From Penicillus capitatus (taxonomy: Eukaryota; Plantae; Chlorophyta): DNA of 64,000 nucleotides. The first letter of the stretch is position 1. Every line of letters starts with the position of its first letter. Of this stretch, positions 1 through 61,331 are shown piece after piece. The stretch is taken from NCBI GenBank assembly GCA_965649825.1, contig OZ287714.1, positions 124,001 through 188,000 on the forward strand. Reading direction: 5' to 3'. Position numbers and translations under genes: made by a program. The notes beneath the pieces were generated by a model that saw only the letters and a program-made list of their open reading frames with translations, did no database searches and had not been told where the DNA came from.

Positions 1-3000
1 TCACGCAGTTGCAGTCTGCTCAGAACGTCCGAACGGCAGCCCATGTGATCCAGCAGGTCACTGCTTTGCTGTCGGTCCTTGGCGCGGAAGACAAATGCTG
101 CCATCAGTGCACAATGCAGGCAGTCCCTTGCATCTGTCTGCGGATACCGGACCATCAGGTTTGTCGCGATGTCCAGGAATGTGACGAAATGTCTGAAGCT
201 GCACCTTCCTCCCTGCCTGTGCAGAAAGCTTCGGATTCTCAGACAGTAATCGCAGATGCCTTCGGCATGCTGTCGACAATGCTCGTCGCACAGGGAGCAT
301 CGCAGCATGGAGTGCAGGACGGAGCAGAACTTGCTGTCTGGCAGCCGTGCGGGATCGTCCACATGCACTGTGAGGAATCGGTTGGCCAGGGCGGCAGTCA
401 GTTCGTTCGACGAGCTGTCGTATCCTCTCGAAGCAACGCCCTTCGGAGTGTGCGTTGCGATGAACTGGAATCCTGCCGCAGGCCCCGGCACCTTGGACAC
501 CGTCCCATCTGCCAGGACGCGGCAACGCAGATTCTTCGTCTCCCCCTTCTCCGACAGGCAGAGGATCTTCGGCGACTCCAGTACGGGGTTGACGCGCTCC
601 TGCAGCACTGCCTCTGCTTGACCGATGTTGTCCACGATGCAGGCGCTGCCATCTTTGAAGGACCTTGTCAGCGGACCGTCCCTCCACTCTATGGCGATGT
701 CTTCACGGCTGTTCTCTTTGGGCAGGTGTTCTCCGAGCATGACGGAGGGTTCGCTCTCCGCGGTGAGCGTGACTTGCTCGTAGCGGTTTCTCAGGAGGAA
801 GGCGATCGTCTTCGCCAAACAGGTCTTGCCCGATCCAGCACATCCCTCGATCAGAATGGGCTGCTCGCTCCGCAGCGCATTGACCAGCGCCGTCAGCAAC
901 GCACATGTCTGATCATTGAGCGCCACGGGCATCTCCGGCACGACAGAGCCGCGGAAAGGCACGGAGGCTCGATCGACGTTCCACTTCGCCGCAAAGATGT
1001 CCAGGATGACCGTCCGGGCTTCGTCCGTCCTGAAAGCGGAGCAGTAGATCTCGGCGCCAAGTCGGCCTAACTCTTCCGGGCTGTCGCTTCTGAAGCACCC
1101 TGTCTGCAGGGCATCCGCTATCCACTGCGCCAACCAGAACTCGGAGAACGAACTGTACACCCCGTGACGTCGCATGAAGTCTGGATCGAGCACGGCTCGC
1201 GAGACATCTCCGTGGATGGACATGCATCGCTCGACCGTCTTGACGCTGTCGTCCGGCAATGCCTTTCCAGGGAAGTGTCTTTTCCAAAAGGCCCCCGCTT
1301 CGAATCCGCATCCCTGTCTGCCTTCCGATGTCAGAGCGCCGTATGCCTGCACCATTCTTTCGAAACTGGAAAGGGGTGTGCCCGACGGGGCGTTCTGCTG
1401 GCTGGCGGACAGGCCACTCTCGCTCAGGACGTCTCGAACCAGCTGCTGGCCGTCCTCCCTGAACCGGCTGCCGTAGATCAGCCATGCATAGTCGCCGAGC
1501 TCTTCGTCCGTCTTGGGCAGCTGTTCGGCGGTTGATATCATTGCTGTCCACATCAACAGCTCCCGGTTCGTGACGACGGTGTGGCTTCCCGTCTCGCAGC
1601 ACCTGCTCTGGATGGCTTCTCTGACGTCGCAATGGAAACCGGTCATCTTTCCTGCCACGGCGCGAATGAGATCCGTCTCTGCGCCTTCGAAGTGGCGATA
1701 CAGTGTCGACTGTACGATGTGATCCCACTCTTGCTTCGGCAGCTCCTTGAAGTGCACGACGGAGAACTGAGAGAAGAAGGCGTGGCTCATTCGCTCTCTC
1801 TTTCCAGCCTGCCACGGATTCTGGGTGGCAAACAGCCTGAAGTTTGGATGCTTCTTCAGAATGCGAGGAGGCGTCAGTGCAGAGCTCTGGTCGCAAAGCA
1901 CGATCTCGCCACTCTCCAATGCATCGACGACCACCTTGAGGGCGCTCTCCTCCGCCAGGTTCATCTCATCGAGCAGGACCCAGTCGCCTTTCTCGAAGCT
2001 CCTGGCGAAGGGCTGCACATCGAGCACGATCTGCCCGACGGGATCGAATGATATCTTCGCCAGAAAGTCCTCCGGAGAGAGATTCGAGGACATGTTGAGA
2101 CGGACCAATTCGACGCCCCTTCGGTCCGCCAGCTCCCTCAGAGTGGCCGTCTTCCCCACTCCAGATGCTCCGTAGAGCAGAACAGGGCGATCGTGCTCCA
2201 CGATCTCTTCGATCATCCGAATGTTCTCTTCTGTCGTCTCTGTTGGGATCAGAGATGCGGATCTCTCGCTGGAGCGATCGTCAGAGCCCTCCGTTGCGCC
2301 TTCCATCTCCGAAGGCGATAGGATCTCTTTTCTCAGTGACGCACTCGCCAGGTTTAGCTGACGACGACCGAACACGGCAACCATCTTCTTCATACCGTCC
2401 AACGACGCCGTGTCGACCTGGACAGTCTTGCCTTCCGGGAAGGTGGCCGAGAGGAACGGACGCATGTGTGTATCCTGCGAGGAGTCGGCCTCTTCTTCTG
2501 CTTCCGTTCCGCTATCCGTTCTCTCTTCGATGGCAAGATGCACCAGTTTCTTCAAATCTTCCGTCTGGATGTCGCTCTCATCTTTCTCCATGAGATCGAA
2601 GACTCTGTGCACCAGTTGACGGATGACACGACAGATAGCTCTTTTGTCTTCCGTAGGCTGTCTCTCCACGAATGCGACCAGCATGTCGAAGAAGGCGGTG
2701 TCAGAGATTGACCCGTCGGAAAAGGACGCATCGAAGGCGGCAGACAGCAGCTTCCTCATGACAGCATCCGATCGACGCAGGTCGGCCGTTATGGCCCGCA
2801 TTAACGGATCGAATTCGTCATCGGGCATTTCGAAATGAACGATGCCACGAGCAACAAGCGTCAGGGCTGGCTCGACGATCTCGGGATACAGGTTCAGCAG
2901 AAGGTACACCAGACGCGTCAAACAGAGAACCGTGTCGATGCTCTGCCCTCCGACGTCGCTCATCAGCTTAAGGAAGCGATCGCGCACCTCTGCCCATGTC

Positions 3001-4670
3001 GATTCCCCGATCTCCGCGTCCTGCAACGCTTGTTGTCCGTTGGCAGATTCCATCAGCCAGCTCAGCGCCAGACGAAGCCAGTCTCCTTCTTCGTCCTCGT
3101 GGCTCAGAAGAAGATCGACAAGCACGCGGACATCATCGATCCCTGGACGTTTCGTCCATCTCTTGATCATGTCCAGAGAACAGGAATTCTGGAGGGGCAC
3201 GCAGAAGTGCCCTCCGTTCTCCCGGGCCAGCTGCAACAGGCACGGAAAGACGCTGAACTGATCGTCCGCATAGTGGCAGTAACGGGAAAGGGACTCGAGC
3301 GTCGAGGACAGCTTCTCTGCATCTTTTTTCAGATGTGCCAAATCCGGATCGCGATGCAGGAAAAGGAACAAACTCCCCAGAGAATGAAACATGTCCGCAT
3401 CAAGACTCGCGACCGGTGGGAGTGCGACGTCGTCCGCAAAGAAAAAACGCAAGAGCGAAAGGCGTTCAAAGCGCCACTCCTTCTCTTTCTTGGTCTGAGG
3501 CTGAAACTGAGTGACGGATCTGAGACAGGCGTCTATGACATCTTGTGGAATCGAGTGACCGATGTTTCTGAGACAAAAAGACACAAATCCTGAGAAGCGC
3601 GCAATGGTAAGCACAGGGAGATCTCCAAAACGAAAAGATGATTGAAAAAGGTAGACAAGGATATCGAGCACCAGAGCGTCGTTCCTTTTCTCGGTGCTAC
3701 GAAGAGTGGAGCACAAGGCGTCAAACATCACGACGCCATCCGAGAAGAAGATAACGTCCAGGATTTTGCTGCGCAGTTGAGATTTGGCAAAGGCAGAAGA
3801 CGGATCGTAAACGTCCGAGAGACTTGAGATCAACCCGGCCACGTCGCGGAGAGACGTCAGCGACTTCAGTGCATCAACGATCAACGCGTCGGGCCTCTTT
3901 CTTGGACCAATCGTGCAACGACGGCCACGATCGTATCTTCCATCGCTCCACGTCAACTCCGTCGTTTCCTCTACAGAGATCTGCAGACACTGATCGGAGG
4001 GGATTCGCCCCTGTGAGATGGTCTTCACAACCAAAGGGCTGACAAAAAGCGTGAGAAGTTCAGGAGAACAGGCGATGTGTTGCAAGGCTCTTTGCTCCGC
4101 GTCCTGTCCCCGAGAGTCACTCGACGAGCCCGGCTGCGGCAAGTGCGTTCGCATTTCGCGCAGGGCCATTTCGACGAGACCCACGATGGCGTCGACCTCC
4201 TGTCCCGTGGACTGGGGAATGGACAGGAGTTCCAGCAGGATGCCCAGATCTGGCTGCTCGTTATGCTTTCTTTGTTCTTTTTTCCACTTTCCCACCGTCA
4301 CATCACCGACAGAGAGCTTCGATGCATTGTACTTTCGAGAAAACAGAAGGACGTCCCAGAAATCGCGTTGCGTTTCGGTATCCGTGCGACGGACGAACCA
4401 TTCAAGTACACGTGCCAAGGGTCCACACATGGCTCCCTTCTGTTCGAAAACGCGAACGGAGTAGGCGTAGACGATGCACCGCATGAGGGCTTTGGACCCG
4501 AGTTCCGTCAGCTCCTCGCTTCCAGCCTCGATGGAGCCATTGTCGATGAAGGACCTGACGGATTTGCGGGCGTCTTTGAGCGATTCCTGTTCCAAACGTC
4601 CGTCGACGGACGACTTGAGTGCGTTTTGGAGAAGGTCGAGTTCCAGCCATTTACTCGCCGGGCGCGACAT
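1..4670 (-). CDS. Giant midasin/Rea1-like multi-AAA+ ATPase, left copy (5' part; 3' end outside window)
   Basis: ATG at 4670 (MSRPASKWLELDLLQNALK). Mirrors 56662..61331 with no net indel. Contains AAA module 1 (GASGVGKT, WVLLDEMNLA) and module 2 (GCAGSGKT). No stop-terminated ORF in this frame appears in the track, implying it is open to the edge. Confidence 0.9.
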   Translation of the reverse strand, partial: MSRPASKWLELDLLQNALKSSVDGRLEQESLKDARKSVRSFIDNGSIEAGSEELTELGSKALMRCIVYAYSVRVFEQKGAMCGPLARVLEWFVRRTDTETQRDFWDVLLFSRKYNASKLSVGDVTVGKWKKEQRKHNEQPDLGILLELLSIPQSTGQEVDAIVGLVEMALREMRTHLPQPGSSSDSRGQDAEQRALQHIACSPELLTLFVSPLVVKTISQGRIPSDQCLQISVEETTELTWSDGRYDRGRRCTIGPRKRPDALIVDALKSLTSLRDVAGLISSLSDVYDPSSAFAKSQLRSKILDVIFFSDGVVMFDALCSTLRSTEKRNDALVLDILVYLFQSSFRFGDLPVLTIARFSGFVSFCLRNIGHSIPQDVIDACLRSVTQFQPQTKKEKEWRFERLSLLRFFFADDVALPPVASLDADMFHSLGSLFLFLHRDPDLAHLKKDAEKLSSTLESLSRYCHYADDQFSVFPCLLQLARENGGHFCVPLQNSCSLDMIKRWTKRPGIDDVRVLVDLLLSHEDEEGDWLRLALSWLMESANGQQALQDAEIGESTWAEVRDRFLKLMSDVGGQSIDTVLCLTRLVYLLLNLYPEIVEPALTLVARGIVHFEMPDDEFDPLMRAITADLRRSDAVMRKLLSAAFDASFSDGSISDTAFFDMLVAFVERQPTEDKRAICRVIRQLVHRVFDLMEKDESDIQTEDLKKLVHLAIEERTDSGTEAEEEADSSQDTHMRPFLSATFPEGKTVQVDTASLDGMKKMVAVFGRRQLNLASASLRKEILSPSEMEGATEGSDDRSSERSASLIPTETTEENIRMIEEIVEHDRPVLLYGASGVGKTATLRELADRRGVELVRLNMSSNLSPEDFLAKISFDPVGQIVLDVQPFARSFEKGDWVLLDEMNLAEESALKVVVDALESGEIVLCDQSSALTPPRILKKHPNFRLFATQNPWQAGKRERMSHAFFSQFSVVHFKELPKQEWDHIVQSTLYRHFEGAETDLIRAVAGKMTGFHCDVREAIQSRCCETGSHTVVTNRELLMWTAMISTAEQLPKTDEELGDYAWLIYGSRFREDGQQLVRDVLSESGLSASQQNAPSGTPLSSFERMVQAYGALTSEGRQGCGFEAGAFWKRHFPGKALPDDSVKTVERCMSIHGDVSRAVLDPDFMRRHGVYSSFSEFWLAQWIADALQTGCFRSDSPEELGRLGAEIYCSAFRTDEARTVILDIFAAKWNVDRASVPFRGSVVPEMPVALNDQTCALLTALVNALRSEQPILIEGCAGSGKTCLAKTIAFLLRNRYEQVTLTAESEPSVMLGEHLPKENSREDIAIEWRDGPLTRSFKDGSACIVDNIGQAEAVLQERVNPVLESPKILCLSEKGETKNLRCRVLADGTVSKVPGPAAGFQFIATHTPKGVASRGYDSSSNELTAALANRFLTVHVDDPARLPDSKFCSVLHSMLRCSLCDEHCRQHAEGICDYCLRIRSFLHRQGGRCSFRHFVTFLDIATNLMVRYPQTDARDCLHCALMAAFVFRAKDRQQSSDLLDHMGCRSDVLSRLQLR

Positions 4671-5540
4671 GGCAGATCTTACTGCTCACAGACAGAGAAA
4701 CCTTGTTAGATCTGGTGTGCGTTCGACAGAGAGGGCGTCACGTGAATGACGTCTTCGACAAAGCGGTTCGCCTTCGCACGCTCCGTTGACAAGGATGTTT
4801 GTTCGTGCGGGCTGACGGCTGTTCGTTCAACTAGAGAACGACTGGGGTTGGAAACGGTGATGTTGCTTAGGCGTTTATAACGACAATATATTAACGTTCG
4901 CAAAGACAGTTTCACCAGTGAAAGTTCGTCGTTTACACCGTCCCGAATGCACCAACGCGCCGTACGACTATGCCTTGGTTTTGGTTAGCTGCCCGAAGCT
5001 GAGCGTGACGTGACGTGGATGTTGAATGGCCTCGAGAGAAGACAACGTTATCTTCGGAAGAATGGAAGAGGGCTTCTCCTTAAGACGGTAAGGAAACGCC
5101 GTTCAAGTCGATATCGAACAGTGTCGCATTCAAGAGGCAGCACCAGCGCGACTGACTCAGCTGCTTGATGCCTTCTGATGGGAATGATTCTATCAGACAA
5201 GACGTCGTCATGTCTGAGAGATGTCACACTTGTTGAGGATAACGAACACTCTGCATGAAAGAGAACCTGTGTTCTCTGTTTGGACGCTTGCAGCGGCTCA
5301 TGTTTTACAACTGTGCTCAGGTTCATGCTTAATGTCCAAACCACATTCGACGTCAGACAACGGCAACGGTCCGGATGCGTATCTTTCCTGCGATCCATCC
5401 ACGCTGCTCGATGGTCCAATGCTACATTCGAGGCAGATCACATCGCTTCTGTTCAGGGCAATGGGGGACATCCCCTTCCATGAAGCGGCAGTGTCCATGA
5501 GAACCGTCAAATCGATCCATCCTGTCATCTTCGCTCTGCA
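4671..5540. promoter_or_regulatory. Bidirectional promoter region between the AAA gene and eIF3m (left arm)
   Basis: 870 bp between divergent ATGs. Short blocks are conserved with the right arm (GTTGCTTAGGCGTTTATAACGACAA, TTAACGTTCGCAAAGAC, CCAGTGAAAGTTCGTCGTTTA) amid substitutions and indels. Confidence 0.6.
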
Positions 5541-7172
5541 ATGAACAACTGTCTCTTCGAAGTTTCGGAGGAAGACTCGTTCTCTCTCGTCTTCAAGTAC
5601 ATCGCAGAGATTCTCGACGGCGGACAGGTGTCTCACCGCTCACTCGTCCAAGTCGAGATCTGACTGAGTCCGTAGACCGTCGATGCCGAGTCGAATTCGG
5701 CGGGAGGCCGCTTTCTCGCGTCCTTCTATCGTCTCGTCGAGAAAGACGCCGAGGCAGAAGAGGTACAGGTGCCCGAGGCGTCCATCCCCCAAATCCTGAC
5801 CCTGTTCGTCGAACAACTGCCCCTCCTCGTCGAGAAGGGCAGCGATGCCGACATCGAGAGTTGCATTCAGATCATCAACCATCATCTGCTGACGAAACTC
5901 GGCCCGGAAGATTCGAGCAGATTTGCTGTCTCCTTGGCCTCGGCCATCTCAGCGAATGTCACATCCGCATTGCTCCTAGCTCCTGCCCCATTCCCATCTG
6001 CATGCAGCACGAGACGAAGACGGAGACGCGGTTGGCGTGTTTGCTGCATCTGTACAATGCCTGCGCCCGCAACGACGATCAGTACAACGTCCTGATGAAG
6101 ACGATCGACTTTGCCATCTCCGCACGCGTGGCAGAGATCCTTGCGCCGATTGTCAAAGGTGGCAGTGCGCAACCTCGCTGTCGAACGGCCTCCGTCAGTC
6201 GTGTGCGGCAGATCACGCCGATGCTCTCGTGGAGAACTGGAAGCTCTCTCATGCGGCGGCCTCCAAGTTGTATCTGGGCATCGCTGTTTTGGTCCGTCAG
6301 AGCAAAGGTGCCTCGATCTGCCCACTCACTCAGGCTCATGTGCCGTTGGTCCCAATGCAGGAGACAAGGAGACACACATGCAGTCACTGGCATTGACGTC
6401 CAAAGCGCTCGCTTCTGTGGACGTGTGACCGACCCCTGGCGACTGCGTGGACCAATACACGCTGTGCATCTAGGCATCGGACAGTTCGGCCTGCAAGGAA
6501 ATGGCCGGCGAAGCTGCTGCCGCGGTCGCCGATTTCCTCAAATCGCCGAAGACCTTTTCGTGCGATCTTCTCGAACTGGCGCCCGTCAAGGCGCTGTCGA
6601 AGAATCCAACGCATCTCTACCTCCATCAGCTCTTCAGTGCCGTTGCCAGAGGACAGATTAATCAGGTCTCGCTCTTTTCGTTGTCCACATGTCCACTACA
6701 GATACGACTGACTGTGCCACAGCTGGAGACGGTCTGTCGGCCAGATCTGCTTCAAAGCCTCGGCATCACTCGCGAGGACTGCCTCGAAAAGACGCGGATG
6801 AGTGCTCTGCTCGGTTTGGCTAGAGCGACTGGCAACAAGCCCATTCTCTATGACCAAGTGGCGTCCGCTCTGCAAACAGAGAGGGAAGAGGTCGAGCAAT
6901 GGATCGTCAAGGCGACAGGTGCAAAACTCTTGTCGGCGCGCATCGATCAGATCCAGGAAGTCATCGTCGTTACCTCCTGCATCAGCAAAGGATTCGACGG
7001 TGCGTGTCAACCGTCATCCACCAAAGCCTCACAGTCTACATTCGACTCAGGGAGCGACTGGAAGAGACTAAAAGAGCAATTGACATCTTGGCACTCCATG
7101 TTGAAGGACATACAGCAGAAGATACACGAAGGCATGAATGCGGATGTCACTTCTTCTCTTCTGCATGTCTAA
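5541..7172 (+). CDS. EIF3M: Translation initiation factor eIF3 subunit M (PCI domain), spliced, left copy
   Basis: MNNCLFEVSEEDSFSLVFKYI | TVDAESN...; ETRLACLLHLYNA; FSCDLLELAPVKAL; EKTRMSALLGLA; EVEQWIVKATGAKLLSARIDQ PCI end; WKRLKEQLTSW. First intron 5628..5675. Ends NADVTSSLLHV*. Confidence 0.9.
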
Positions 7173-7634
7173 ACGCACGCCTAGCCTGTCAAAGAGATCC
7201 TCTAGACTGTGTGTTGTGCGATTTTATGGCCACGGGGTCACGGACCCAGGAAGAGTCTGGTATTGTAGGTCCACGTCACCACGTGGTTGTGACGTCAGAC
7301 ATGTACGGCCTTAACGTTTGCGCCACGTCTTCAGCGTCATTCTTGCTGTCCCATTATTTTTGAGGCATTCGACAAACCAAGATCGTGTGCTCGACCATTC
7401 CAAGTAAGAACGACCTGTTGTTCTTCTCTTTCTCCTTCTTTTCGACGACAGTGACGCTGACGCTGAGTTTGCTTGCTCTTCCAGACCCAACGTCTTGTCA
7501 TTCTTCGACTGCAACCATTCATGTTCTTCGCTGTTTCTCGATTTGTTATCTTTGGCTTTTTGACCTTTAGATGTTCTAGCTCTCTGAGTTCGCGCACTCG
7601 GCCTCTATTGAAAGAGCCTGTATCACCGTGAGGG

Positions 7635-9063
7635 ATGGACGAGGCGTCTGTTCACGAAACGCAATTATCTACGACGACAAGAGTCACGCGCAACGACGAG
7701 AACCATACGGCCGCCATTGATAACACGGACGACGGCAACACCATGCGTCCCCCGAGTTTTATGCGTTATCACCACTCGGTCTCGAGTCTGAGGGAGTCGC
7801 TCGCGACATCGCCGCCAAAACGCAGACCACGTCCTACAGCGATCCGACCGCGATGCTCTTGCCCGATCTACGGTGTACGTGCCAGTGCCGGACGCCGTGC
7901 TCGCATGGAAGACGCTGTATCTATTGTGGAGAATCTGTTGGAAGTCTCGCGTTCTGGCGGGTTCTGGAGATCCGATCGATCGAGACAAGACCATCATCTC
8001 AAACTTGAAGGCGTGAGTGGTAATGGCACTGTGTCGCCTCCTGTTCGACGTCTATCCCGGGAAAGCATCGAAACGGAAGTCTGTCACTTCTTCGGTGTCT
8101 ACGATGGACATAATGGACCCTACGCTGCACATCACTGTCGCGGACGATTGCATGAGAATCTCCGCGCCGCTTACATGGATCTTTGCTCTTCGGGTGAGAG
8201 CGATACCGAATCGGTGACGGTTGGAATGGATATGGGAATGACAGCAACAGCCAGTTCCGTGGATATGCAGGGATGGCCCTCTGCAGCGAATCATCTCTCT
8301 AGTGGTGAAGGATTGAGCAATGGAGCCACAAGTCGAATGTCGGCGACCGTGGCAAGCATGCCAACAGAGGAGGAGGTGTTCTTGGAGACATTCCGCAGAA
8401 CGGATCATCAGTTTTCGGAGTATCGATGTGCTGAGAGGGTCGGAACAACGGCATTGACTGCTCTCGTCGGAACAAACCACATCACTGTCGGCAGCTGCGG
8501 TCTGATCCCATAGACAGACGCTCTCATCATCTCACTCTTTGCGTATGTACAGGCGACTCGAGAGCAGTCATGTATCGTTCAGGCGAAGTCATTCAACTGT
8601 CGAATGATCATCGATTGGACAAGCTCGAAGAGAAGGTCCTGATGCTGTTGTGGTTTGCATGGGATGATGGGACAGCTCGTAGGCAAGGATCGAAAGCGCT
8701 GGGGGGAAGGTGACGTACTGGAATGGTCCCCGCGTTATGGGTGTATTGGCGATGTCCCGAGCCATTGGAGATTTGTGTTTTCGTCCATACGGTGTGATCT
8801 GTGACCCAGAAGTGGTGACGGTGCAGCGGACCGTCGAAGATGAATACTTACTGTTAGCTACAGATGGTCTCTGGGATGTGTTGACAAACGAGGAGGCATA
8901 TCGTATCATACGTCACACCATTGCGTCAAATCACGCTCAAGGCGCGAGCCTAGAAGAGTGTATTCAGAGTTCTGCGAATCGTCTGACACGCATCGCTCTA
9001 GACAGAGGCAGTCGTGATAACATTACCGTCATTCTGCTGGATCTGCAATCCGACGGTTACTAA
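7635..9063 (+). CDS. Protein phosphatase 2C, group-A-like, spliced
   Basis: GRRARMEDA, FFGVYDGHNG, GTTA, CG|DSRAV, GGKVTYWNGPRVMGVLAMSRAIGD, LATDGLWDV, GSRDNITV. Confidence 0.93.
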
Positions 9064-9548
9064 ACTCGAGCTTCATCCGATCCCTGCCTGCGACAAAGAG
9101 CTGTGTGTATTTGTAAATTGGTGAAAGAGTGATGTATGTCGGTGTGGTTTCTATGGCTGAGTTTTGCAGCTGTTAAACATGCTTCAGTTTTTGGAATCGT
9201 AATAATTCTTTTGTTCCGGAAGCGGATGAAGCTCTGATCGGTAACCCATCGACCCACGGACCGACCGACCCATCGACCAATCGATCAACGAACCATCAAA
9301 CAGACGTACAGACAGGAAGGGTGAACAGGGCTTGAGCATTTTTACACATTTTCTATCCGTCCAGTATTCGTGGAATGAAGAATGAGTTGGTTGTAACTCC
9401 CTGTCTTGGCGAATTTTAGTGATTCTGCCTCGAAATCTAGTATTTGTATTGGACCTTCGCATTCTCATCGCCAAATGTCCAATTTAGCTGACTCAAGAAT
9501 GATGTAAAGCTTTAATGAAATGCGCACGGATATATCGTATTGCGAGAA

Positions 9549-10848: not shown

Positions 10849-10978
10849 ATTTCTCAATCTTATGAGGCGTTTGTAGCCATCTGCCTGACGTGACGTTTCC
10901 AGGATAGTTGTCGTACATCGAACCAGAAGATACGAAATTATTCAACGCATTCCGTTTGCTGCTCGTCACTTTCTCTCG

Positions 10979-47410: not shown

Positions 47411-47463
47411 TTGATTGAAGAGCTTAAATAGCCTCGTATGAAGGAAAAGGAGAGTGGATGTGT

Positions 47464-49522: not shown

Positions 49523-49533
49523 ACGTTGCGTCT
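49523..49533 (+). repeat. Target-site duplication, 5' copy (ACGTTGCGTCT)
   Basis: Exact 11-mer repeated at 53266..53276. Confidence 0.8.
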
Positions 49534-49542
49534 CTGAACGGG

Positions 49543-49932: not shown

Positions 49933-49970
49933 ACAGACCCTCGTGCTCACCGAAGGCGAGAAGACAGGCG

Positions 49971-52900: not shown

Positions 52901-53197
52901 ACGCAACTGTCGCTGCTCTGTCAATTCTTACTCGAACATTGGCCAGCCCGCACGCATCTATACCGCATCCAAAAAGCTGAATCGGAAGCATGTCGTCTCT
53001 GTGCACATCCTCTGGAGAATCACGAACATCTCTTCCAATGTCCTGCACTCCTCCAAGCTCGCACTCATCTATGGCACCGCCCGAAGAACTTGGCTGAAGC
53101 CACACAGCTGATCGCGAAGAAACAATTTCTACGCTCGATCCCGCCTTTTGTTGCACATGTCTATCAAAATTGGGGACTCTCCCACGTACATTGGTAA
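49971..53197 (+). pseudogene. LINE ORF2 pseudogene (endonuclease-reverse transcriptase)
   Basis: Frameshifts near 50105, 50665, 50795 and 50828; in-frame stops TGA ~50710, TAA 51893 and TAG 52319, with homology continuing after each. Confidence 0.9.
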
Positions 53198-53265
53198 ACG
53201 TTGATGTCCGGTATCCCACCCCACATGCCACTGTCACAAGGGGAATTAACACTGATTCGCACACA

Positions 53266-53276
53266 CACGTTGCGTC
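53266..53276 (+). repeat. Target-site duplication, 3' copy (ACGTTGCGTCT)
   Basis: Exact match to 49523..49533; directly preceded by CGCACACAC. Confidence 0.8.
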
Positions 53277-53771
53277 TGGCTGGCAGTCCTATAAATGTTT
53301 TCGCCATGGTCGCCTTTGTCTTCGGAAGCGGAGCCCCTCTCCTTCGCTTTGTCTCTTCATAGCCAAACCTTTGGCCGTAATGTCGCGGATAAGCTTCGAT
53401 ACGCTCGTTCTGATGCATGGCTTATAACCCAGCTTCAAAAAACGATAAACAGCGTGAATGTGGCCGTAGAGTGCAATTTGCTCTTGCTGAATCTGCAGCA
53501 AACGCGTCGTCAGTCGAATGTTGCGCGACATGAACAACTGCGATCGATCCCAATGAAACGCGTTGGGCTCAGCGAATGATGATCACATTAGCAAATCTGT
53601 CCGTGCAAAGGAGGCTACCAGTCAAACTGACAAACAGATATGATTTGTAGAATCCTGTAATTTCAAAGGATCTGCAGTCAGCAGTGAGGCCAGGTGCCAT
53701 CAACAGAATAAAGAAGAAATACAGCAAGCACTCTGATGCAATGATGTTATGGTGACGAGTTCCGTCCTCCT

Positions 53772-54181
53772 TTACGCGTCATCGTATTCCTCCTCCACAA
53801 GATCCATCGCCTCCTGCTCGTTCAGATAAGGCTGGTAGGCCTCTTCACTCGATGAGGCTTCTTCAGAAGGCTTGGCTCCGAAGAAACAGAACTCTGGATG
53901 TCACATCAGCCATGTGCCCCAAAGAGATGTAGATATAACCGTACCATAGACGCCTTCCCTGAGGAACTCAATAAAACCGGCAGTGTCTGAGCCTTTAGGA
54001 TGATTGAGTTCGATGCACCTCATGCCAGGTGCGCCCGAGAACAACGTCAAGGCATCTATCGGAACACATGGCTTCCTCCCGTTCCGATGTTTCAATTCCG
54101 AAAGCATTCGGTGCCAGCATAGAATCCATTGTATGAGATGGTCATGCAGTTGAACTGGTGGAACCATCCACCCATATCCAC
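53772..54181 (-). pseudogene. Orphan 3' end of an unidentified gene abutting the right repeat arm
   Basis: Frame GYGWMVPPVQLHDHLIQW...FIEFLREGVY | GT-AG intron | EFCFFGAKPSEE...DLVEEEYDDA* (TAA at 53774). Its upstream sequence is the eIF3m copy. Confidence 0.55.
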
Positions 54182-55784
54182 TCCGCATTCATGCCTTCGT
54201 GCATCTTCTGTTGCATGTCCTTCAACATGGAGTGCCAAGATGTCAATTGCTCTTTTAGTCTCTTCCAGTCGCTCCCTGAGTCGAATGTAGACTGTGAGGC
54301 TTTGGTGGATGACGGTTGACACGCACCGTCGAATCCTTTGCTGATGCAGGAGGTAACGACGATGACTTCCTGGATCTGATCGATGCGCGCCGACAAGAGT
54401 TTTGCACCTGTCGCCTTGACGATCCATTGCTCGACCTCTTCCCTCTCTGTTTGCAGAGCGGACGCCACTTGGTCATAGAGAATGGGCTTGTTGCCAGTCG
54501 CTCTAGCCAAACCGAGCAGAGCACTCATCCGCGTCTTTTCGAGGCAGTCCTCGCGAGTGATGCCGAGGCTTTGAAGCAGATCTGGCCGACAGACTGTCTC
54601 CAGCTGTGACACAGTCAGTCATATCTGTAGTGGACATGTGGACAACGAAAAGAGCGAGACCTGATTAATCTGTCCTCTGGCAACGGCACTGAAGAGCTGA
54701 TGGAGGTAGAGATGCGTTGGATTCTTCGACAGCGCCTTGACGGGCGCCAGTTCGAGAAGATCGCACGAAAAGGTCTTCGGCGATTTGAGGAAATCGGCGA
54801 CCGCGGCAGCAGCTTCGCCGGCCATTTCCTTGCAGGCCGAACTGTCCGATGCCTAGATGCACAGCGTGTATTGGTCCACGCAGTCGCAGGGGTCGGTCAC
54901 ACGTCCACAGAAGCGAGCGCTTTGGACGTCAATGCCAGTGACTGCATGTGTGTCTCCTTGTCTCCTGCATTGGGACCAACGGCACAGGAGCCTGAGTGAG
55001 TGGGCAGATCGAGGCACCTTTGCTCTGACGAACCAAAACAGCGATGCCCAGATACAACTTGGAGGCCGCCGCATGAGAGAGCTTCTAGTTCTCCACGAGA
55101 GCATCGGCGTGATCTGCCGCACACGACTGACGGAGGCCGTTCGACAGCGAGGTTGCGCACTGCCACCTTTCACAATCGGCGCAAGGATCTCTGCCACGCG
55201 TGCGGAGATGGCAAAGTCGATCGTCTTCATCAGGACGTTGTACTGATCGTCGTTGTGGGCGCAGGCATTGTACAGATGCAGCAAACACGCCAACCGCGTC
55301 TCCGTCTTCGTCTCGTGCTGCATGCAGATGGGAATGGGGCAGGAGCTAGGAGCAATGCGGATGTGACATTCGCTGAGATGGCCGAGGCCAAGGAGACAGC
55401 AAATCTGCTCGAATCTTCCGGGCCGAGTTTCGTCAGCAGATGATGGTTGATGATCTGAATGCAACTCTCGATGTCGGCATCGCTGCCCTTCTCGACGAGG
55501 AGGGGCAGTTGTTCGACGAACAGGGTCAGGATTTTGGGGATGGACGCCTCAGGCACCTGGACCTCGTCTCCCTCGGCGTCTTTCTCGACGAGACGATAGA
55601 AGGACGCGAGAAAGCGGCCTCCCGCCGAATTCGACTCGGCATCGACGGTCTACGGACTCAGTCAGATCTCGACTTAGACGAGTGTTCGGTGAGACACCTG
55701 TCCGCCGTCGAGAATCTCTGCGATGTACTTGAAGACGAGAGAGAACGAGTCTTCCTCCGAAACTTCGAAGAGACAGTTGTTCAT
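54142..55784 (-). CDS. EIF3M: eIF3m, second copy with a different C-terminal tail
   Basis: Mirror of 5541..7144; the single 1-bp indel falls in an intron. Ends NAEWIWVDGSTSSTA* using sequence from beyond the repeat junction. Confidence 0.85.
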
Positions 55785-58700
55785 TGCAGAGCGAAGATGA
55801 CAGGATGGATCGATTTGACGGTTCTCATGGACACTGCCGCTTCATGGAAGGGGATGTCCCCCATTGCTCCGAACAGAAGCGATGTGATCTGCCTCGAATG
55901 TAGCATTGGACCATCGAGCAGCGTGGATGGATCGCAGGAAAGATACGCATCCGGACCGTTGCCGTTGTCTGACGTCGAATGCGGTTTGGACATGAAGCAT
56001 GAATCTCGACATAATCGTAAAACACGAGCAGCTGCAAGCGTCCAAACAGAGAATACAGGTTCTCTTTCATGCAGAGTGTTCGTTATCCTCAACAAGTGTG
56101 ACATCTCTCAGACATGACGACGTCTGGTCTGATAGAATCATCCCCATCAGAAAGCATCAAGCTGCTGAGTCGGTCGCGCTGGTGCTGGTGTTGCATCCTA
56201 ATCGCGCAACGCCATTCGAAATCGTCTTGAAGGGCGTTTCTTTGCCGCTTGAAGGAGAAGCCCTCTTCCATTCTTTGGACGATAACGTTGCCTTGGCTTG
56301 AGGCCATTGAGCAGTCACGTCACGCTCAACTTCGGGCAGCTGACCAAGGCGTGGTCGAGCGGCGCGTTAGTACGTTCGGGTCGGTATAAACGACGAACTT
56401 TCACTGGTAAAAAACAGTCTTTGCGAACGTTAAGCCTTTGTCGTTATAAACGCCTAAGCAACACCACCGTTCTCCTGGTGAACGAGCAACCGCCTGCGTC
56501 CACGAACGAACAGTCACCAGCCCGCACGAACAAACATCCTTGTCAACGGAGCGTGCGAAGGCGAACCGCTTTGTCGAAGACGTCATTCACGTGACGCCCT
56601 CTCTGTCGAACGCACACCAGATCTAACAAGGTTTCTCTGTCTGTGAGCAGTAAGATCTGCCATGTCGCGCCCGGCGAGTAAATGGCTGGAACTCGACCTT
56701 CTCCAAAACGCACTCAAGTCGTCCGTCGACGGACGTTTGGAACAGGAATCGCTCAAAGACGCCCGCAAATCCGTCAGGTCCTTCATCGACAATGGCTCCA
56801 TCGAGGCTGGAAGCGAGGAGCTGACGGAACTCGGGTCCAAAGCCCTCATGCGGTGCATCGTCTACGCCTACTCCGTTCGCGTTTTCGAACAGAAGGGAGC
56901 CATGTGTGGACCCTTGGCACGTGTACTTGAATGGTTCGTCCGTCGCACGGATACCGAAACGCAACGCGATTTCTGGGACGTCCTTCTGTTTTCTCGAAAG
57001 TACAATGCATCGAAGCTCTCTGTCGGTGATGTGACGGTGGGAAAGTGGAAAAAAGAACAAAGAAAGCATAACGAGCAGCCAGATCTGGGCATCCTGCTGG
57101 AACTCCTGTCCATTCCCCAGTCCACGGGACAGGAGGTCGACGCCATCGTGGGTCTCGTCGAAATGGCCCTGCGCGAAATGCGAACGCACTTGCCGCAGCC
57201 GGGCTCGCCGAGTGACTCTCGGGGACAGGACGCGGAGCAAAGAGCCTTGCAACACATCGCCTGTTCTCCTGAACTTCTCACGCTTTTTGTCAGCCCTTTG
57301 GTTGTGAAGACCATCTCACAGGGGCGAATCCCCTCCGATCAGTGTCTGCAGATCTCTGTAGAGGAAACGACGGAGTTGACGTGGAGCGATGGAAGATACG
57401 ATCGTGGCCGTCGTTGCACGATTGGTCCAAGAAAGAGGCCCGACGCGTTGATCGTTGATGCACTGATATCGCTGACGTCTCTCCGCGACGTGGCCGAGTT
57501 GATCTCAAGTCTCTCGGACGTTTACGATCCGTCTTCTGCCTTTGCCAAATCTCAACTGCGCAGCAAAATCCTGGACGTTATCTTCTTCTCGGATGGCGTC
57601 GTGATGTTTGACGCCTTGTGCTCCACTCTTCGTAGCACCGAGAAAAGGAACGACGCTCTGGTGCTCGACATCCTTGTCTACCTTTTTCAATCATCTTTTC
57701 GTTTTGGAGATCTCCCTGTGCTTACCATTGCGCGCTTCTCAGGATTTGTGTCTTTTTGTCTCAGAACCATCGGTCACTCGATTCCACAAGATGTCATAGA
57801 CGCCTGTCTCAGATCCGTCACTCAGTTTCAGCCTCAGACCAAGAAAGAGAAGGAGTGGCGCTTTGAACGCCTTTCGCTCTTGCGTTTTTTCTTTGCGGAC
57901 GACGTCGCACTCCCACCGGTCGCGAGTCTTGATGCGGACATGTTTCATTCTCTGGGGAGTTTGTTCCTTTTCCAGCATCGCGATCCGGATTTGGCACATC
58001 TGAAAAAAGATGCAGAGAAGCTGTCCTCGACGCTCGAGTCCCTTTCCCGTTACTGCCACTATGCGGACGATCAGTTCAGCGTCTTTCCGTGCCTGTTGCA
58101 GCTGGCCCGAGAGAACGGAGGGCACTTCTGCGTGCCCCTCCAGAATTCCTGTTCTCTGGACATGATCAAGAGATGGACGAAACGTCCAGGGATCGATGAT
58201 GTCCGCGTGCTTGTCGATCTTCTTCTGAGCCACGAGGACGAAGAAGGAGACTGGCTTCGTCTGGCACTGAACTGGCTGATGGAATCTGCCAACGGACAAC
58301 AGGCGTTGCAGGACGCGGAGATCGGGGAATCGACATGGGCAGAGGTGCGCGATCGCTTCCTTAAGCTGATGAGCGACGTCGGAGGGCAGAGCATCGACAC
58401 GGTTCTCTGTTTGACGCGTCTGGTGTACCTTCTGCTGAACCTGCATCCCGAGATCGTCGAGCCAGCCCTGACGCTTGTTGCTCGTGGCATCGTTCATTTC
58501 GAAATGCCCGATGACGAATTCGATCTGTTAATGGGGGCCATGACGGCCGACCTGCGTCGATCGGATGCTGTCATGAGGAAGCTGCTGTCTGCCGCCTTCG
58601 ATGCGTCCTTTTCCGACGGGTCAATCTCTGACACCGCCTTCTTCGACATGCTGGTCGCATTCGTGGAGAGACAGCCTAAGGAAGACAAAAGAGCTATCTG

Positions 58701-61331
58701 TCGTGTCATCCGTCAACTGGTGCACAGAGTCTTCGATCTCATGGAGAAAGATGAGAGCGACATCCAGACGGAAGGTTTGAAGAAACTGGTGCATCTTGCC
58801 ATCGAAGAGAGAACGGATAGCGGAACGGAAGCAGAAGAAGAGGCCGACTCCTCGCAGGATACACACATGCGTCCGTTCCTCTCGGCCACCTTCCCGGAAG
58901 GCAAGACTGTCCAGGTCGACACGGCGTCGTTGGACGGTATGAAGAAAATGGTTGCCGTGTTCGGTCGTCGTCAGCTAAACCTGGCGAGTGCGTCACTGAG
59001 AAAAGAGATCCTATCGCCTTCGGAGATGGAAGGCGCAACGGAGGGCTCTGACGATCGCTCCAGCGAGAGATCCGCATCTCTGATCCCAACAGAGACGACA
59101 GAAGAGAACATTCGGATGATCGAAGAGATCGTGGAGCACGATCGCTCTGTTCTGCTCTACGGAGCATCTGGAGTGGGGAAGACGGCCACTCTGAGGGAGC
59201 TGGCGGACCGAAGGGGCGTCGAATTGGTCCGTCTCAACATGTCCTCGAATCTCTCTCCGGAGGACTTTCTGGCGAAGATATCATTCGATCCCGTCGGGCA
59301 GATCGTGCTCGATGTGCAGCCCTTCGCCAGGAGCTTCGAGAAAGGCGACTGGGTCCTGCTCGATGAGATGAACCTGGCGGAGGAGAGTGCCCTCAAGGTG
59401 GTCGTCGATGCATTGGAGAGTGGCGAGATCGTGCTTTGCGACCAGAGCTCTGCACTGACGCCTCCTCGCATTCTGAAGAAGCATCCAAACTTCAGGCTGT
59501 TTGCCACCCAGAATCCGTGGCAGGCTGGAAAGAGAGAGCGAATGAGCCACGCCTTCTTCTCTCAGTTCTCCGTCGTGCACTTCAAGGAGCTGCCGAAGCA
59601 AGAGTGGGATCACATCGTACAGTCGACACTGCACCGCCACTTCGAAGGCGCAGAGACGGATCTCATTCGCGCCGTGGCAGGAAAGATGACCGGTTTCCAT
59701 TGCGACGTCAGAGAAGCCATCCAGAGCAGGTGCTGCGAGACGGGAAGCCACACCGTCGTCACGAACCGGGAGCTGTTGATGTGGACAGCAATGATATCAA
59801 CCGCCGAACAGCTGCCCAAGACGGACGAAGAGCTCGGCGACTATGCATGGCTGATCTACGGCAGCCGGTTCAGGGAGGACGGCCAGCAGCTGGTTCGAGA
59901 CGTCCTGAGCGAGAGTGGCCTGTCTGCCAGCCAGCAGAACGCCCCGTCGGGCACACCCCTTTCCAGTTTCGAAAGAATGGTGCAGGCATACGGCGCTCTG
60001 ACATCGGAAGGCAGACAGGGATGCGGATTCGAAGCGGGGGCCTTTTGGAAAAGACACTTCCCTGCAAAAGCATTGCCGGACGACAGCGTCAAGACGGTCG
60101 AGCGATGCTTGTCCATCCACGGAGATGTCTCGCGAGCCGTGCTCGATCCAGACTTCATGCGACGTCACGGAGTGTACAGTTCGTTCTCCGAGTTCTGGTT
60201 GGCGCAGTGGATCGCGGATGCCCTGCAGACAGGGTGCTTCAGGAGCGACAATCCAGAGGAGTTAGGCCGACTTGGCGCCGAGATCTACTGCCCCGCTTTC
60301 AGGACGGACGAAGCCCGGACGGTCATCCTGGACATCTTTGCGGCGAAGTGGAACGTCGATCGAGCCTCCGTGCCTTTCCGCAGCTCTGTCGTGCCGGAGA
60401 TGCCCGTGGCGCTCAATGATCAGTCATGTGCGTTGCTGACGGCGCTGGTCAATGCGCTGCGGAGCGAGCAGCCCATTCTGATCGAGGGATGTGCTGGATC
60501 GGGCAAGACCTGTTTGGCGAAGACGATCGCCTTCCTCCTGAGAAACCGCTACGAGCAAGTCACGCTCACCGCGGAGAGCGAACCCTCCGTCATGCTCGGA
60601 GAACACCTGCCCAAGGAGAACAGCCGTGAAGACATCGCCATAGAGTGGAGGGACGGTCCGCTGACGAGATCCTTCAAAGATGGCAGCGCCTGCATCGTGG
60701 ACAACATCGGTCAAGCAGAGGCAGTGTTGCAGGAGCGCGTCAACCCCGTACTGGAGTCGCCGAAGATCCTCTGCCTGTCGGAGAAGGGGGAGACGAAGAA
60801 TCTGCGTTGCCGCGTCCTGGCAGATGGGACGGTGTCCAAGGTGCCGGGGCCTGCGGCAGGATTCCAGTTCATCGCAACGCACACTCCGAAGGGCGTTGCT
60901 TCGAGAGGATACGACAGCTCGTCGAACGAACTGACTGCCGCCCTGGCCAACCGATTCCTCACAGTGCATGTGGACGATCCCGCACGGCTGCCAGACAGAG
61001 AGTTCTGCTCCGTCCTGCACTCCATGCTGCGATGCTCCCTGTGCGACGAGCATTGTCGACAGCATGCCGAAGGCATCTGCGATTACTGTCTAAGAATCCG
61101 AAGCTTTCTGCACAGGCAGGGAGGAAGGTGCAGCTTCAGACATTTCGTCACATTCCTGGACATCGCGACAAACCTGATGGTCCGGTATCCGCAGACAGAT
61201 GCAAGGGACTGCCTGCATTGTGCACTGATGGCAGCATTTGTCTTCCGCGCCAAGGACCGACAGCAAAGCAGTGACCTGCTGGATCACATGGGCTGCCGTT
61301 CGGACGTTCTGAGCAGACTGCAACTGCGTGA
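54182..61331. repeat. Right arm of the inverted duplication (outer limit not visible because the left arm leaves the window)
   Basis: Reverse complement of 1..7144. Confidence 0.98.

What the first reader, a model, noticed from the sequence alone, without database searches (positions are those of the whole stretch)
1..61331. >=7.1-kb inverted repeats bracket a 47-kb block of core genes (inversion scar or invertible segment)
Seen: near-identical arms in opposite orientation with sharp inner edges at 7144 and 54182 and a 47,037-bp spacer containing COPA, STT3, myosin XI and others. Known: staggered-break inversions leave inverted duplications at their ends, and recombination between long inverted repeats flips the spacer. 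Inference: the block may exist in two orientations. A crossover within the AAA genes would also swap their 5' halves onto different 3' halves, producing chimeric ATPases.
Basis: partly seen in the sequence, partly recalled or inferred. Interest (0 to 1): 0.75.

Follow-up and report, generated by a model that had tools for sequence, protein, structure and literature searches.

The report
Large inverted gene duplication with exchange
A microbial eukaryote carries two inverted copies of a segment of at least 10.6 kb (probably about 27 kb), holding a giant midasin-like ATPase gene and an eIF3m-like gene, on either side of 47 kb of housekeeping genes; the copies seem to be kept alike by exchange between them, as in sex-chromosome palindromes, and no flip of the middle block was seen.

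Summary
The inverted repeat is real. Window 1-7144 matches the reverse complement of 54182-61331 (97.7% over 7166 columns; 98.8% outside one 310-bp patch), with sharp inner edges and a 47,037-bp spacer. The stated end, 61331, only reflects the window starting inside the left arm. A second assembly of the same organism has the same structure and spacing. It shows arms of at least 10.6 kb. Gene calls there give complete ORFs of 8205 and 8237 codons, so the arms are probably about 27 kb.

Each arm holds a midasin-like AAA gene and, divergently transcribed, an eIF3m-like gene. The right eIF3m copy lacks only the last 9 codons. A related species shows AAA/eIF3m/PP2C as at the left edge, so the right inner junction is the new one.

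The arms differ by about 1-2.5%, but a 310-bp patch between the two genes differs by 18.6%. Silent-site divergence between arms is only 4-8% of that to the relative; in the patch it is about two thirds. Differences from the relative are GC-biased in the arms only. This fits an old inverted duplication homogenised by gene conversion. Flipping of the spacer is expected but not shown. The "chimeric ATPase" idea does not apply as written. This is a new member of a known kind.

The parts
1..7144 (.). Left arm of the inverted duplication, as far as the window shows it. It continues at least 3.5 kb to the left of the window.
   Evidence: The extension comes from L002 against L003.
54182..64000 (.). 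Right arm. 54182-61331 pairs with window 1-7144. 61332-64000 pairs with sequence left of the window that is seen in L002.
7145..54181 (.). 47,037-bp single-copy spacer. It holds PP2C (7635-9063), zf-CCHC, a TPR protein, two trypsin ORFs, a protein kinase (15951-17318), a second PP2C (17252-18109), a hexapeptide-repeat protein, COPA (about 21469-25210, minus strand), Snf7 (27090-27599), a class V/XI-type myosin (about 30386-35400, plus strand), STT3 (about 38207-39893, minus strand), an LRR protein, an aldo-keto reductase, a rhodanese, an S10 carboxypeptidase (47464-48981, minus strand) and a LINE.
   Evidence: Pfam scans; gene calls.
1..4670 (-). 5' 1556 codons of the left copy of the giant midasin-like AAA gene. 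The ORF is open; the start codon is at 4670. The full ORF is called as 8205 codons in the other assembly.
   Evidence: AAA_5 and the midasin lid domain; PDB midasin match with E 2.8e-85 and six stretches.
56662..64000 (+). 5' 2446 codons of the right copy of the same gene, open throughout. The full ORF is called as 8237 codons in the other assembly.
4829..5137 (.). Left version of the divergent patch. It lies inside the roughly 870-nt region between the divergently transcribed AAA gene (start 4670) and eIF3m-like gene (start about 5541).
   Evidence: 18.6% substitutions plus 7 indels against the right version. The same version is present in the other assembly.
56193..56504 (.). Right version of the divergent patch.
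5541..7172 (+). Left, complete eIF3m-like (PCI-domain) gene, with several short introns. Its last 28 nt (9 codons plus the stop) lie outside the arm.
   Evidence: PCI domain; eIF3m chains in PDB at E 3.4e-10; exon peptides. The C-terminus DVTSSLLHV* is shared with the relative.
54142..55784 (-). Right eIF3m-like copy. All exon peptides that I searched were found except one, which has a changed residue. The last 9 codons are replaced by 13 unrelated codons (EWIWVDGSTSSTA*) that read into the spacer.
49560..53300 (+). Degenerate non-LTR retrotransposon (endonuclease + reverse transcriptase, with ORF2 broken into three ORFs). It ends about 0.9 kb inside the right inner edge. No role in the duplication was shown. 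The boundaries are approximate.
   Evidence: It is also present in the other assembly.
62769..63026 (+). In-frame tandem duplication of about 126-129 nt (an acidic segment) in the right AAA copy only.

Best explanation
This is a genuine inverted segmental duplication in the nuclear genome of an unidentified microbial eukaryote. It has the form of a 'palindrome with a long spacer'. Each arm carries a complete giant midasin-like AAA ATPase gene and a divergently transcribed eIF3m-like gene. The arms are at least 10.6 kb by sequence and probably about 27 kb.

The left inner junction is ancestral. The right inner junction is the new one: it cuts the eIF3m copy 28 nt before its stop codon.

The duplication is much older than the 1-2.5% arm divergence suggests. 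Non-allelic gene conversion between the arms, probably GC-biased, keeps them alike. A 310-bp stretch of the shared promoter region, bounded by indels, has escaped this homogenisation. It records a split about two thirds as deep as the split from the nearest sampled relative.

Crossover resolution of the same recombination intermediates would invert the 47-kb spacer. That is an expected by-product and was not observed.

Shown: the structure, its presence in two assemblies, the intact ORFs, the patch, the rate contrast, the composition bias and the conflicting site patterns. Inferred: conversion as the cause, the age, and the ability to invert.
For: Structure.

Second assembly: L002 and L003 lie on one 6.93-Mb ENA contig, 49 kb apart, in the same orientation. 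That contig differs from the window at 80 sites in 1-5221, 0 sites in 5222-17172 and 18 sites in 45438-64000, so it is not the same consensus.

Both AAA copies are open over 1556 and 2446 codons. dN/dS between arms is 0.34-0.37, against 0.24 between species. The full ORFs are called at 8205 and 8237 codons; the relative's is 8236.

The relative (L001) has AAA(-)/PCI(+)/PP2C(+) and the left-type eIF3m C-terminus.

Rate contrast: silent-site divergence between arms is 0.019-0.035, against 0.45-0.47 to the relative, a ratio of 0.04-0.08. In the patch, arm-to-arm divergence is 18.6% against 27% to the relative. Both arms carry derived states there (24 and 29 sites). The non-coding arm sequence on either side of the patch is 21-22% diverged from the relative but only about 1-3% between arms, so the patch is not simply hypermutable.

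Composition: in the arms, 649 differences are AT in the relative and GC in the window, against 353 the other way (p = 6e-21). The unique flank gives 86 against 81 and the patch 33 against 39. Fisher's test of arms against flank gives p = 0.0013. GC3 of the arm genes is 6-9 points higher than in the relative; PP2C is unchanged. Arm GC is 56% against 50.5% in the spacer.

Site patterns polarised with the relative, in the AAA 5' part: 17 derived alleles are shared by the window's left arm and both right arms but absent from the other assembly's left arm. Eight are shared by the other assembly's left arm and both right arms but absent from the window's left arm. Only 3 unite the two left arms. The patterns are interleaved along the sequence.
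Against: No reads were available, so neither assembly's junctions are verified at read level. The two assemblies may share data or methods.

The outer ends of the arms and the 3' two thirds of both AAA genes were not seen. Their homology is inferred from ORF lengths only.

The GC bias is strongest in coding parts, so lineage-specific codon usage or an allelic recombination hotspot could add to it. With one outgroup, the lineage that changed is not polarised. The bias fades only roughly at the arm edge: 27:18 in 6700-7144 and 22:10 in 7635-8199.

The shared-allele patterns could partly come from old allelic polymorphism plus allelic recombination. The switch to 0 differences at 5222 looks like an allelic crossover point.

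The arm identity of 97.3-98.8% is lower than in classical palindromes (above 99%).
Confidence: 0.68

Rival explanations
1. Young inverted duplication without concerted evolution. The segment was copied recently from a haplotype like the window's left arm. The 1-2.5% divergence is its true age. The 310-bp patch was later overwritten in one arm from some third, diverged source. Allele sharing reflects old polymorphism at the left locus plus ordinary allelic recombination.
For: The window's left and right arms are closer to each other (45 differences in 4.7 kb) than either is to the other assembly's left arm (77 and 70). The sharp switch from 1.5% to 0% difference between the assemblies at 5221/5222 looks like an allelic crossover. 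A 69%-identical AAA paralogue exists in the relative's sample, so other family members exist.
Against: Both arms carry derived states in the patch (24 and 29 sites), so one replacement does not explain it. No third copy of the patch or of the eIF3m gene turned up: protein search found only the window's own product and the relative's, and look-ups 12 and 25 each found one place. The paralogue has unrelated neighbours. Eight derived alleles unite the other left allele with the right arms, which a copy made from the window-type haplotype does not predict. The GC-biased excess is confined to the arms and absent from the patch.
Confidence: 0.17
2. Inversion scar. A 47-kb inversion made by staggered breaks duplicated the sequence between the staggered cuts, leaving it in inverted orientation at both ends. 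This concerns the origin only and is compatible with later conversion.
For: The layout fits: one arm has an ancestral inner junction and the other a new one, and ancestrally unique genes are duplicated in inverted orientation. Synteny with the relative ends at about window 9530, so the region has been rearranged since the split.
Against: The duplications in the defining data set are hundreds of bp, at most about 1.9 kb (PMC1885836). Here the arms are at least 10.6 kb and probably 27 kb. The only shared part of the spacer (7145-9530) is in the ancestral orientation relative to the arm next to it. The model's key prediction is that the outer flank of that arm is new and the other arm's outer flank is ancestral. 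I could not test it.
Confidence: 0.1
3. Assembly artefact: a second haplotype (haplotig) of the AAA/eIF3m region was joined in inverted orientation, or a repeat was mis-resolved.
For: The contigs have metagenome-assembler style names. Arms of about 27 kb exceed typical HiFi read length. The two assemblies disagree by 1.5% in the left AAA 5' part.
Against: The same junctions, spacing and arm-specific differences occur in both assemblies: 89 fixed left-versus-right differences in the patch and eIF3m region. The spacer is unique, and the homology ends to the base inside a gene. Allelic diversity nearby is 0-0.15%, while the patch differs by 18.6%. The right copy has its own in-frame duplication, and both ORFs are intact.
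Confidence: 0.04

Closest known systems
Large palindromes of primate X and Y chromosomes (for example X palindrome P24, with FLNA and EMD in its spacer, and Y palindrome P6)
   Same: Arms of tens of kb in inverted orientation carry intact protein-coding genes. The spacer can be long and hold broadly expressed genes: spacers run from 77 bp to 358 kb, and 11 of 26 X palindromes have spacer genes (PMC8327919). Arm similarity is maintained by arm-to-arm gene conversion that is GC-biased. Arms are more GC-rich than their flanks (PMC8981503; PMC3723533). Here arm GC is 56% against 50.5%, and there is a 1.8:1 GC-ward excess.
   Different: Arm identity here is 97.3-98.8%, not above 99%. A conversion-free island with 18.6% divergence sits in the promoter region. 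The host is a microbial eukaryote of unknown ploidy and sex, not a sex chromosome. The arm genes are a ribosome-biogenesis-type ATPase and a translation factor, not testis gene families. Spacer inversion, which is documented for those palindromes (P24 is inverted in 18% of European X chromosomes; about 50% of palindromes differ between species), is untested here.
Inverted duplications at inversion breakpoints from staggered breaks (Drosophila melanogaster group; Ranz et al. 2007, PMC1885836)
   Same: Ancestrally unique genes are duplicated in inverted orientation at the two ends of a segment. One junction is ancestral and one is new.
   Different: The size differs by one to two orders of magnitude (median 321 bp and maximum about 1.9 kb, against at least 10.6 kb). 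Those duplicates usually decay (about 88% identity, many non-functional), whereas here both copies are intact and 98-99% alike. Inversion relative to an outgroup is not shown.
Inverted-repeat-mediated polymorphic inversions by non-allelic homologous recombination in human (PMC3961182)
   Same: Long, highly similar inverted repeats flank tens of kb of unique sequence, which is the substrate for recurrent inversion.
   Different: Only the substrate is shown here. Both available assemblies have one orientation.
Midasin (MDN1/Rea1)
   Same: It is the closest solved relative of the arm gene. Six AAA_5-type modules match midasin chains (E 2.8e-85), and there is a midasin AAA lid domain.
   Different: The gene has about 8200 codons against about 4700-4900 in the solved midasins. 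Identity is only about 26% over the AAA ring. The C-terminal MIDAS domain was not seen because it lies outside the window. A 69%-identical paralogue exists in the relative's sample, so this is a small family, not clearly the single-copy midasin orthologue.

Membership tests
Palindrome / large inverted segmental duplication with spacer (as described for primate sex chromosomes) | Two arms in inverted orientation on one chromosome, separated by a unique spacer | tested here: met
   The same layout is on one 6.93-Mb contig of another assembly.
Palindrome / large inverted segmental duplication with spacer (as described for primate sex chromosomes) | Arm length of 8 kb or more | tested here: met
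   At least 10.64 kb by sequence. About 27 kb is inferred from complete ORFs of 8205 and 8237 codons.
Palindrome / large inverted segmental duplication with spacer (as described for primate sex chromosomes) | Arm-to-arm identity above 99% | tested here: not met
   97.7% overall and 98.8% outside the patch. 97.3-97.8% further out. Only 1-4828 and 6439-7144 reach about 99.1%.
Palindrome / large inverted segmental duplication with spacer (as described for primate sex chromosomes) | Arm-to-arm gene conversion (concerted evolution) | tested here: inconclusive
   Supported by the patch-versus-arm rate contrast, conflicting polarised site patterns and a GC-ward bias confined to the arms. No population or pedigree data were available to show conversion events directly.
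Palindrome / large inverted segmental duplication with spacer (as described for primate sex chromosomes) | Spacer found in both orientations | not testable with these tools
   Two assemblies show one orientation. No reads were available.
Staggered-break inversion with inverted duplications at its ends | The segment between the duplicates is inverted relative to the ancestral order | tested here: inconclusive
   The relative shares only 7145-9530 of the spacer, in the ancestral orientation next to the left arm.
Staggered-break inversion with inverted duplications at its ends | Duplicate size in the range seen for the mechanism (46 bp to about 1.9 kb) | tested here: not met
   At least 10.6 kb here, against PMC1885836.
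Programmed invertible segment (site-specific recombinase switch) | Short inverted repeats with a recombinase gene in or beside the segment | tested here: not met
   The arms are many kb long and hold genes. None of the spacer ORFs that I scanned matched a recombinase family. Not every small ORF was scanned.
Midasin (MDN1/Rea1) | Ring of six AAA_5-type modules | tested here: met
   Six matched stretches to midasin chains. AAA_5 with 4 stretches passing on their own, plus AAA_lid_7.
Midasin (MDN1/Rea1) | C-terminal MIDAS (VWA-type) domain after a long linker and an acidic region | not testable with these tools
   The 3' two thirds of both genes lie outside the window and the fetched loci.
eIF3 subunit M | PCI domain and overall similarity to eIF3m | tested here: met
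   PF01399 at E 8.5e-9. Human eIF3m chains at E 3.4e-10 over residues 196-368 of a hand-spliced model. The exon joins are my own guess.
Non-LTR (LINE) retrotransposon | Apurinic-type endonuclease plus reverse transcriptase in one ORF2 | tested here: met
   PF14529 and PF00078 in 50216-51892. ORF2 is interrupted.

The most novel reading that the evidence does not exclude
The 310-bp island in the shared promoter region is kept distinct by selection while the coding sequences on both sides are homogenised. The cell would then hold two near-identical copies of a giant midasin-like ATPase/eIF3m gene pair under different regulation. A crossover on either side of the island, which flips the spacer, would re-pair promoters with gene bodies and with the only native eIF3m 3' end. 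The structure would then act as a slow, recombination-driven expression switch and not as a passive duplicate.
Probability: 0.12. Interest if true: 0.6.

Novelty: new member of a known kind. Interest (0 to 1): 0.4.

Why it matters
Palindrome-like inverted duplications that evolve in concert are well studied on mammalian sex chromosomes and poorly studied in protists. This one gives an internal clock, the unconverted patch, that exposes how misleading arm identity is as a measure of age. It also offers a substrate for recurrent inversion of 47 kb holding essential genes (COPA, STT3, a myosin). For annotation, it means the two giant ATPase genes are true paralogues and not an assembly duplicate, and that one eIF3m copy has a changed C-terminus.

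Tried and rejected
(1) I used the third and last homology search on a concatenated query (S10 peptidase + STT3 + TPR protein). I hoped to get protein ids of the relative's orthologues and so see what lies next to the S10 gene there. It returned only long, distant S10 proteins and no close relative, and no organism could be named from them. Whether the relative has the duplication therefore stays open.

(2) A look-up of the 505-aa S10 ORF found nothing on record. The caller uses a later start, and the other assembly differs there.

(3) Walking to the outer ends of the arms was not possible. The only called genes there are the AAA ORFs of more than 8000 residues, above the look-up limit, and proteins from fetched loci are not accepted. 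I did not try to get round this.

(4) The ORF next to the right junction (53904-54179, minus strand) looked like a truncated gene with an acidic tail. It has no Pfam family. The exhaustive search gave three weak hits to unrelated repeat proteins (SRCR, SprB, Big_3), so they are spurious. The stretch 53200-54181 has no similarity to anything else held.

(5) I rejected a role for the LINE in forming the junction. Its last ORF ends 0.98 kb from the edge, and no LINE-related sequence occurs elsewhere in the window or loci.

(6) I tested whether the window's left arm is a simple chimera of the other assembly's left arm and the right arm. It is not: it has 21-23 private sites, and the site types are interleaved without long tracts.

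(7) I considered a flip between the two assemblies with a crossover near 5221 and rejected it. The window's left AAA part is not the other assembly's right AAA part (about 45 differences).

(8) The apparent stop codon in the right eIF3m copy lies in a roughly 40-nt intron, as the relative's gene shows, so it is not a pseudogene mark.

(9) tRNA, Rfam and tandem-repeat scans of the window were empty.

Full report
OBSERVATION

The repeat search finds three collinear inverted pairs. BLAST joins them into one alignment: window 1-7144 against the reverse complement of 54182-61331, at 97.70% identity over 7166 columns, with 127 mismatches and 20 gap openings. Similarity stops to the base at 7144 and 54182, which leaves a 47,037-bp spacer.

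The differences are not evenly spread. Outside one patch there are 84 mismatches and a single 1-bp indel in 6834 nt, or 98.8% identity. The patch (left 4829-5137, right 56193-56504) holds about 58 substitutions and 7 indels.

The window has no N runs, no tRNA genes, no Rfam matches and no tandem arrays.

WHAT THE ARMS CONTAIN

The minus strand of 1-4670 is one open frame of 1556 codons. The plus strand of 56662-64000 is the same frame, open for 2446 codons.

- It carries AAA_5 modules and a midasin AAA lid domain.
- Its closest solved relatives are midasins, with six matched stretches and E 2.8e-85.
- Database relatives are few: proteins at 42-69% identity from metagenome contigs, then midasins at about 26%.

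An eIF3m-like PCI-domain gene with several short introns is transcribed in the opposite direction, about 870 nt away. It lies at about 5541-7172 on the left and about 55784-54142 on the right.

The left arm ends 28 nt before this gene's stop codon. The right copy therefore replaces the last nine residues (DVTSSLLHV) with thirteen unrelated ones read from the spacer. The stop codon that shortens the right-hand ORF lies in a roughly 40-nt intron, as the relative's gene shows, so the right copy is otherwise intact.

THE ARMS ARE LONGER THAN THE FINDING SAYS

An exact-protein look-up with the left eIF3m ORF returned locus L002. It comes from a 6.93-Mb ENA metagenome contig and reaches 3.5 kb to the left of the window. 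A look-up with an ORF specific to the right arm returned L003 from the same contig, 49 kb away and in the same orientation. It reaches 2.1 kb beyond the window's right end.

L002 matches the right arm through window 64000 and on into L003 at 97.3-97.8%. The arms are therefore at least 10.64 kb, and the stated end of 61331 is only the mirror image of the window's first base.

The gene calls on that contig give complete products of 8205 residues (left) and 8237 residues (right). The orthologue in a related species has 8236. If the two are homologous throughout, each arm is about 27 kb. I could not see the 3' two thirds of the genes or the outer ends of the arms.

IS IT AN ARTEFACT?

The ENA contig is not the same consensus as the window. 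It differs at 80 positions in window 1-5221, at none in 5222-17172, and at 18 in 45438-64000. Yet it has the same junctions, the same spacing to within a few bases, and the same arm-specific states. All 51 patch differences and 38 of the 42 differences in the eIF3m region are fixed left against right in both assemblies.

Several further points argue against a haplotig mis-join:
- the spacer is unique;
- the homology ends inside a gene;
- the right copy has its own in-frame tandem duplication of about 126-129 nt;
- both giant ORFs are open.

I had no reads, so a small probability remains.

WHICH JUNCTION IS ANCESTRAL?

The nearest relative available is L001, at about 84-86% nucleotide identity, from another ENA sample. 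It has AAA (minus strand), the PCI gene (plus strand) and PP2C (plus strand) in the same order as the left arm and its flank. It also has the left-type eIF3m C-terminus. Similarity to the relative ends at about window 9530, and nothing further in L001 matches the window. So the left inner junction is ancestral and the right one is new.

Next to the right junction lie about 0.98 kb with no recognisable content, and then a degenerate LINE (endonuclease plus reverse transcriptase) at about 49.6-53.3 kb. I found nothing that ties the LINE to the duplication.

AGE AND CONCERTED EVOLUTION

In the AAA coding sequence, silent divergence between the arms is 0.019 (window) to 0.035 (other assembly). To the relative it is 0.45-0.47. 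dN/dS is 0.34-0.37 between arms and 0.24 between species, so both copies are under constraint.

In the 310-bp patch the arms differ by 18.6%, and each differs from the relative by 27%. Derived states occur on both arms, at 24 and 29 sites. The non-coding arm sequence on either side of the patch is 21-22% diverged from the relative but only about 1-3% between arms. The patch is therefore not simply fast-mutating.

Relative to the species split, the arm-to-arm split looks about two thirds as deep in the patch, but only 4-8% as deep elsewhere. The simplest reading is an old duplication whose arms are homogenised by non-allelic gene conversion, except for a stretch that escaped. That stretch is bounded by indels of 5 and 13 nt at one end and 2 and 6 nt at the other.

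Two further observations fit this reading.

First, composition. Differences from the relative are GC-ward in the arms: 649 sites are AT in the relative and GC here, against 353 the other way (p = 6e-21). They are balanced in the adjacent unique flank (86 against 81) and in the patch (33 against 39). Fisher's test of arms against flank gives p = 0.0013. GC3 of the arm genes is 6-9 points above the relative's, while PP2C is unchanged. The arms are 56% GC against 50.5% for the spacer. This is the signature reported for GC-biased conversion in primate palindromes (PMC8981503; PMC3723533).

Second, site patterns. I polarised sites in the AAA 5' part with the relative:
- 17 derived alleles are shared by the window's left arm and both right arms, but not by the other assembly's left arm;
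- 8, all within 605-1270, are shared by the other assembly's left arm and both right arms, but not by the window's left arm;
- only 3 unite the two left arms.

These patterns are interleaved. They cannot all fit one tree, so sequence has moved between arms, between alleles, or both.

CAVEATS

- The GC bias is strongest in coding parts, and one outgroup cannot say which lineage changed.
- The bias fades only roughly at the arm edge.
- Silent divergence to the relative is 2-3 times higher in arm genes than in PP2C (0.32-0.47 against 0.17). An allelic recombination hotspot could produce that too.
- The abrupt change from 1.5% to 0% difference between the two assemblies at 5221/5222 is best read as an allelic crossover point. 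Part of the allele sharing could therefore be old polymorphism.

For these reasons I keep a young duplication with a secondarily replaced patch as the main rival. Against that rival, no third copy of the patch or of the eIF3m gene appeared. The diverged AAA paralogue in the relative's sample has unrelated neighbours.

Inversion of the spacer by crossover between the arms is what such a structure is expected to allow. In primate X palindromes it is common: about half differ between species, and P24, with FLNA and EMD in its spacer, is inverted in 18% of European X chromosomes (PMC8327919). On Y palindrome P6, conversion is frequent but inversion is rare (PMC3723533). Here both assemblies show one orientation. 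The claim is neither supported nor refuted.

The staggered-break origin fits the layout but not the scale. The defining Drosophila cases are hundreds of bp, with a maximum of about 1.9 kb (PMC1885836).

The predicted 'chimeric ATPases' come from taking the window edge as the arm's end. Both arms carry the whole gene, so exchange yields mosaics of two near-identical paralogues.

VERDICT

This is a real, large inverted segmental duplication, a palindrome with a long gene-bearing spacer, in an unidentified microbial eukaryote. It most likely evolves in concert through GC-biased gene conversion, with an unconverted promoter island that dates it. It is a new member of a known kind and of moderate interest. 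The parts worth following up are the island, the outer ends of the arms, and a read-level test for both orientations.

The organism could not be named. The closest named hits to any gene tried are at or below 39% identity.

Noticed in passing
window 1-5221 against L002 3498-8720: Two assemblies of the same organism are identical over 12 kb of spacer (5222-17172) but differ at 80 sites (1.5%) in the left AAA 5' part. The right arms differ at only 5 sites in 9.8 kb. The left-arm alleles carry 22 and 14 private derived changes. This could be deep allelic polymorphism, a recombination hotspot or a strain mixture in the assembly. It is unresolved.
   Followed up: partly
window 690-698, 1074-1089, 2710-2739, 4559-4587: The differences between the left-arm alleles come in tight clusters, often spaced 3 nt apart (third codon positions). 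That looks like short templated tracts from a more diverged homologue and not like independent point mutations. No donor was identified.
   Followed up: no
window 62769-63026: The right AAA copy has an in-frame tandem duplication of about 126-129 nt, encoding an acidic Ser/Gly/Glu-rich segment. It is absent from the left copy in L002 and largely absent from the relative.
   Followed up: partly
window 49560-53300: A degenerate non-LTR retrotransposon (endonuclease + reverse transcriptase, ORF2 split into three ORFs) is the only mobile element seen. It lies 0.9 kb inside the right inner edge and raises local GC to 58%.
   Followed up: partly
window 53200-54181: About 1 kb between the LINE and the right junction has no similarity to anything held. 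It includes a 95-aa minus-strand ORF (53901-54188) followed by an acidic tail. It could be the remnant of the gene into which the copy was inserted, but searches gave only spurious hits.
   Followed up: yes
window about 9530; L001 12845-20492: Synteny with the related species stops just after PP2C. The relative continues with JmjC, methyltransferase and kinesin genes, none of which is in the window. The window continues with zf-CCHC, TPR, trypsin and kinase genes. This is a separate rearrangement or insertion near the palindrome.
   Followed up: partly
window 6681-6719 (left) and 54607-54645 (right): A roughly 40-nt intron of the eIF3m-like gene is open in frame in the left copy, giving a 223-aa ORF that reads through it. 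It holds a stop codon in the right copy and in the relative. ORF-based gene calls therefore differ between copies without any functional difference.
   Followed up: yes
L004 (ENA ERZ26696514 ctg303794) 10001-27479: The relative's sample holds a second giant AAA gene, 69% identical in protein and split into ORFs of 2492 and 5717 residues. It lies on another contig of similar coverage with unrelated neighbours. The giant ATPase therefore belongs to a small gene family.
   Followed up: partly
window 7635-9063 and 17252-18109; 12845-14358: The spacer holds two PP2C phosphatase genes 8 kb apart and two adjacent trypsin-domain ORFs (possibly one gene with an intron or frameshift).
   Followed up: no
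window 1-7144 and 54182-64000 against 7145-49500: The arms are 5-6 GC points richer than the spacer (56% against 50%). The step is visible in the 2-kb composition profile.
   Followed up: yes
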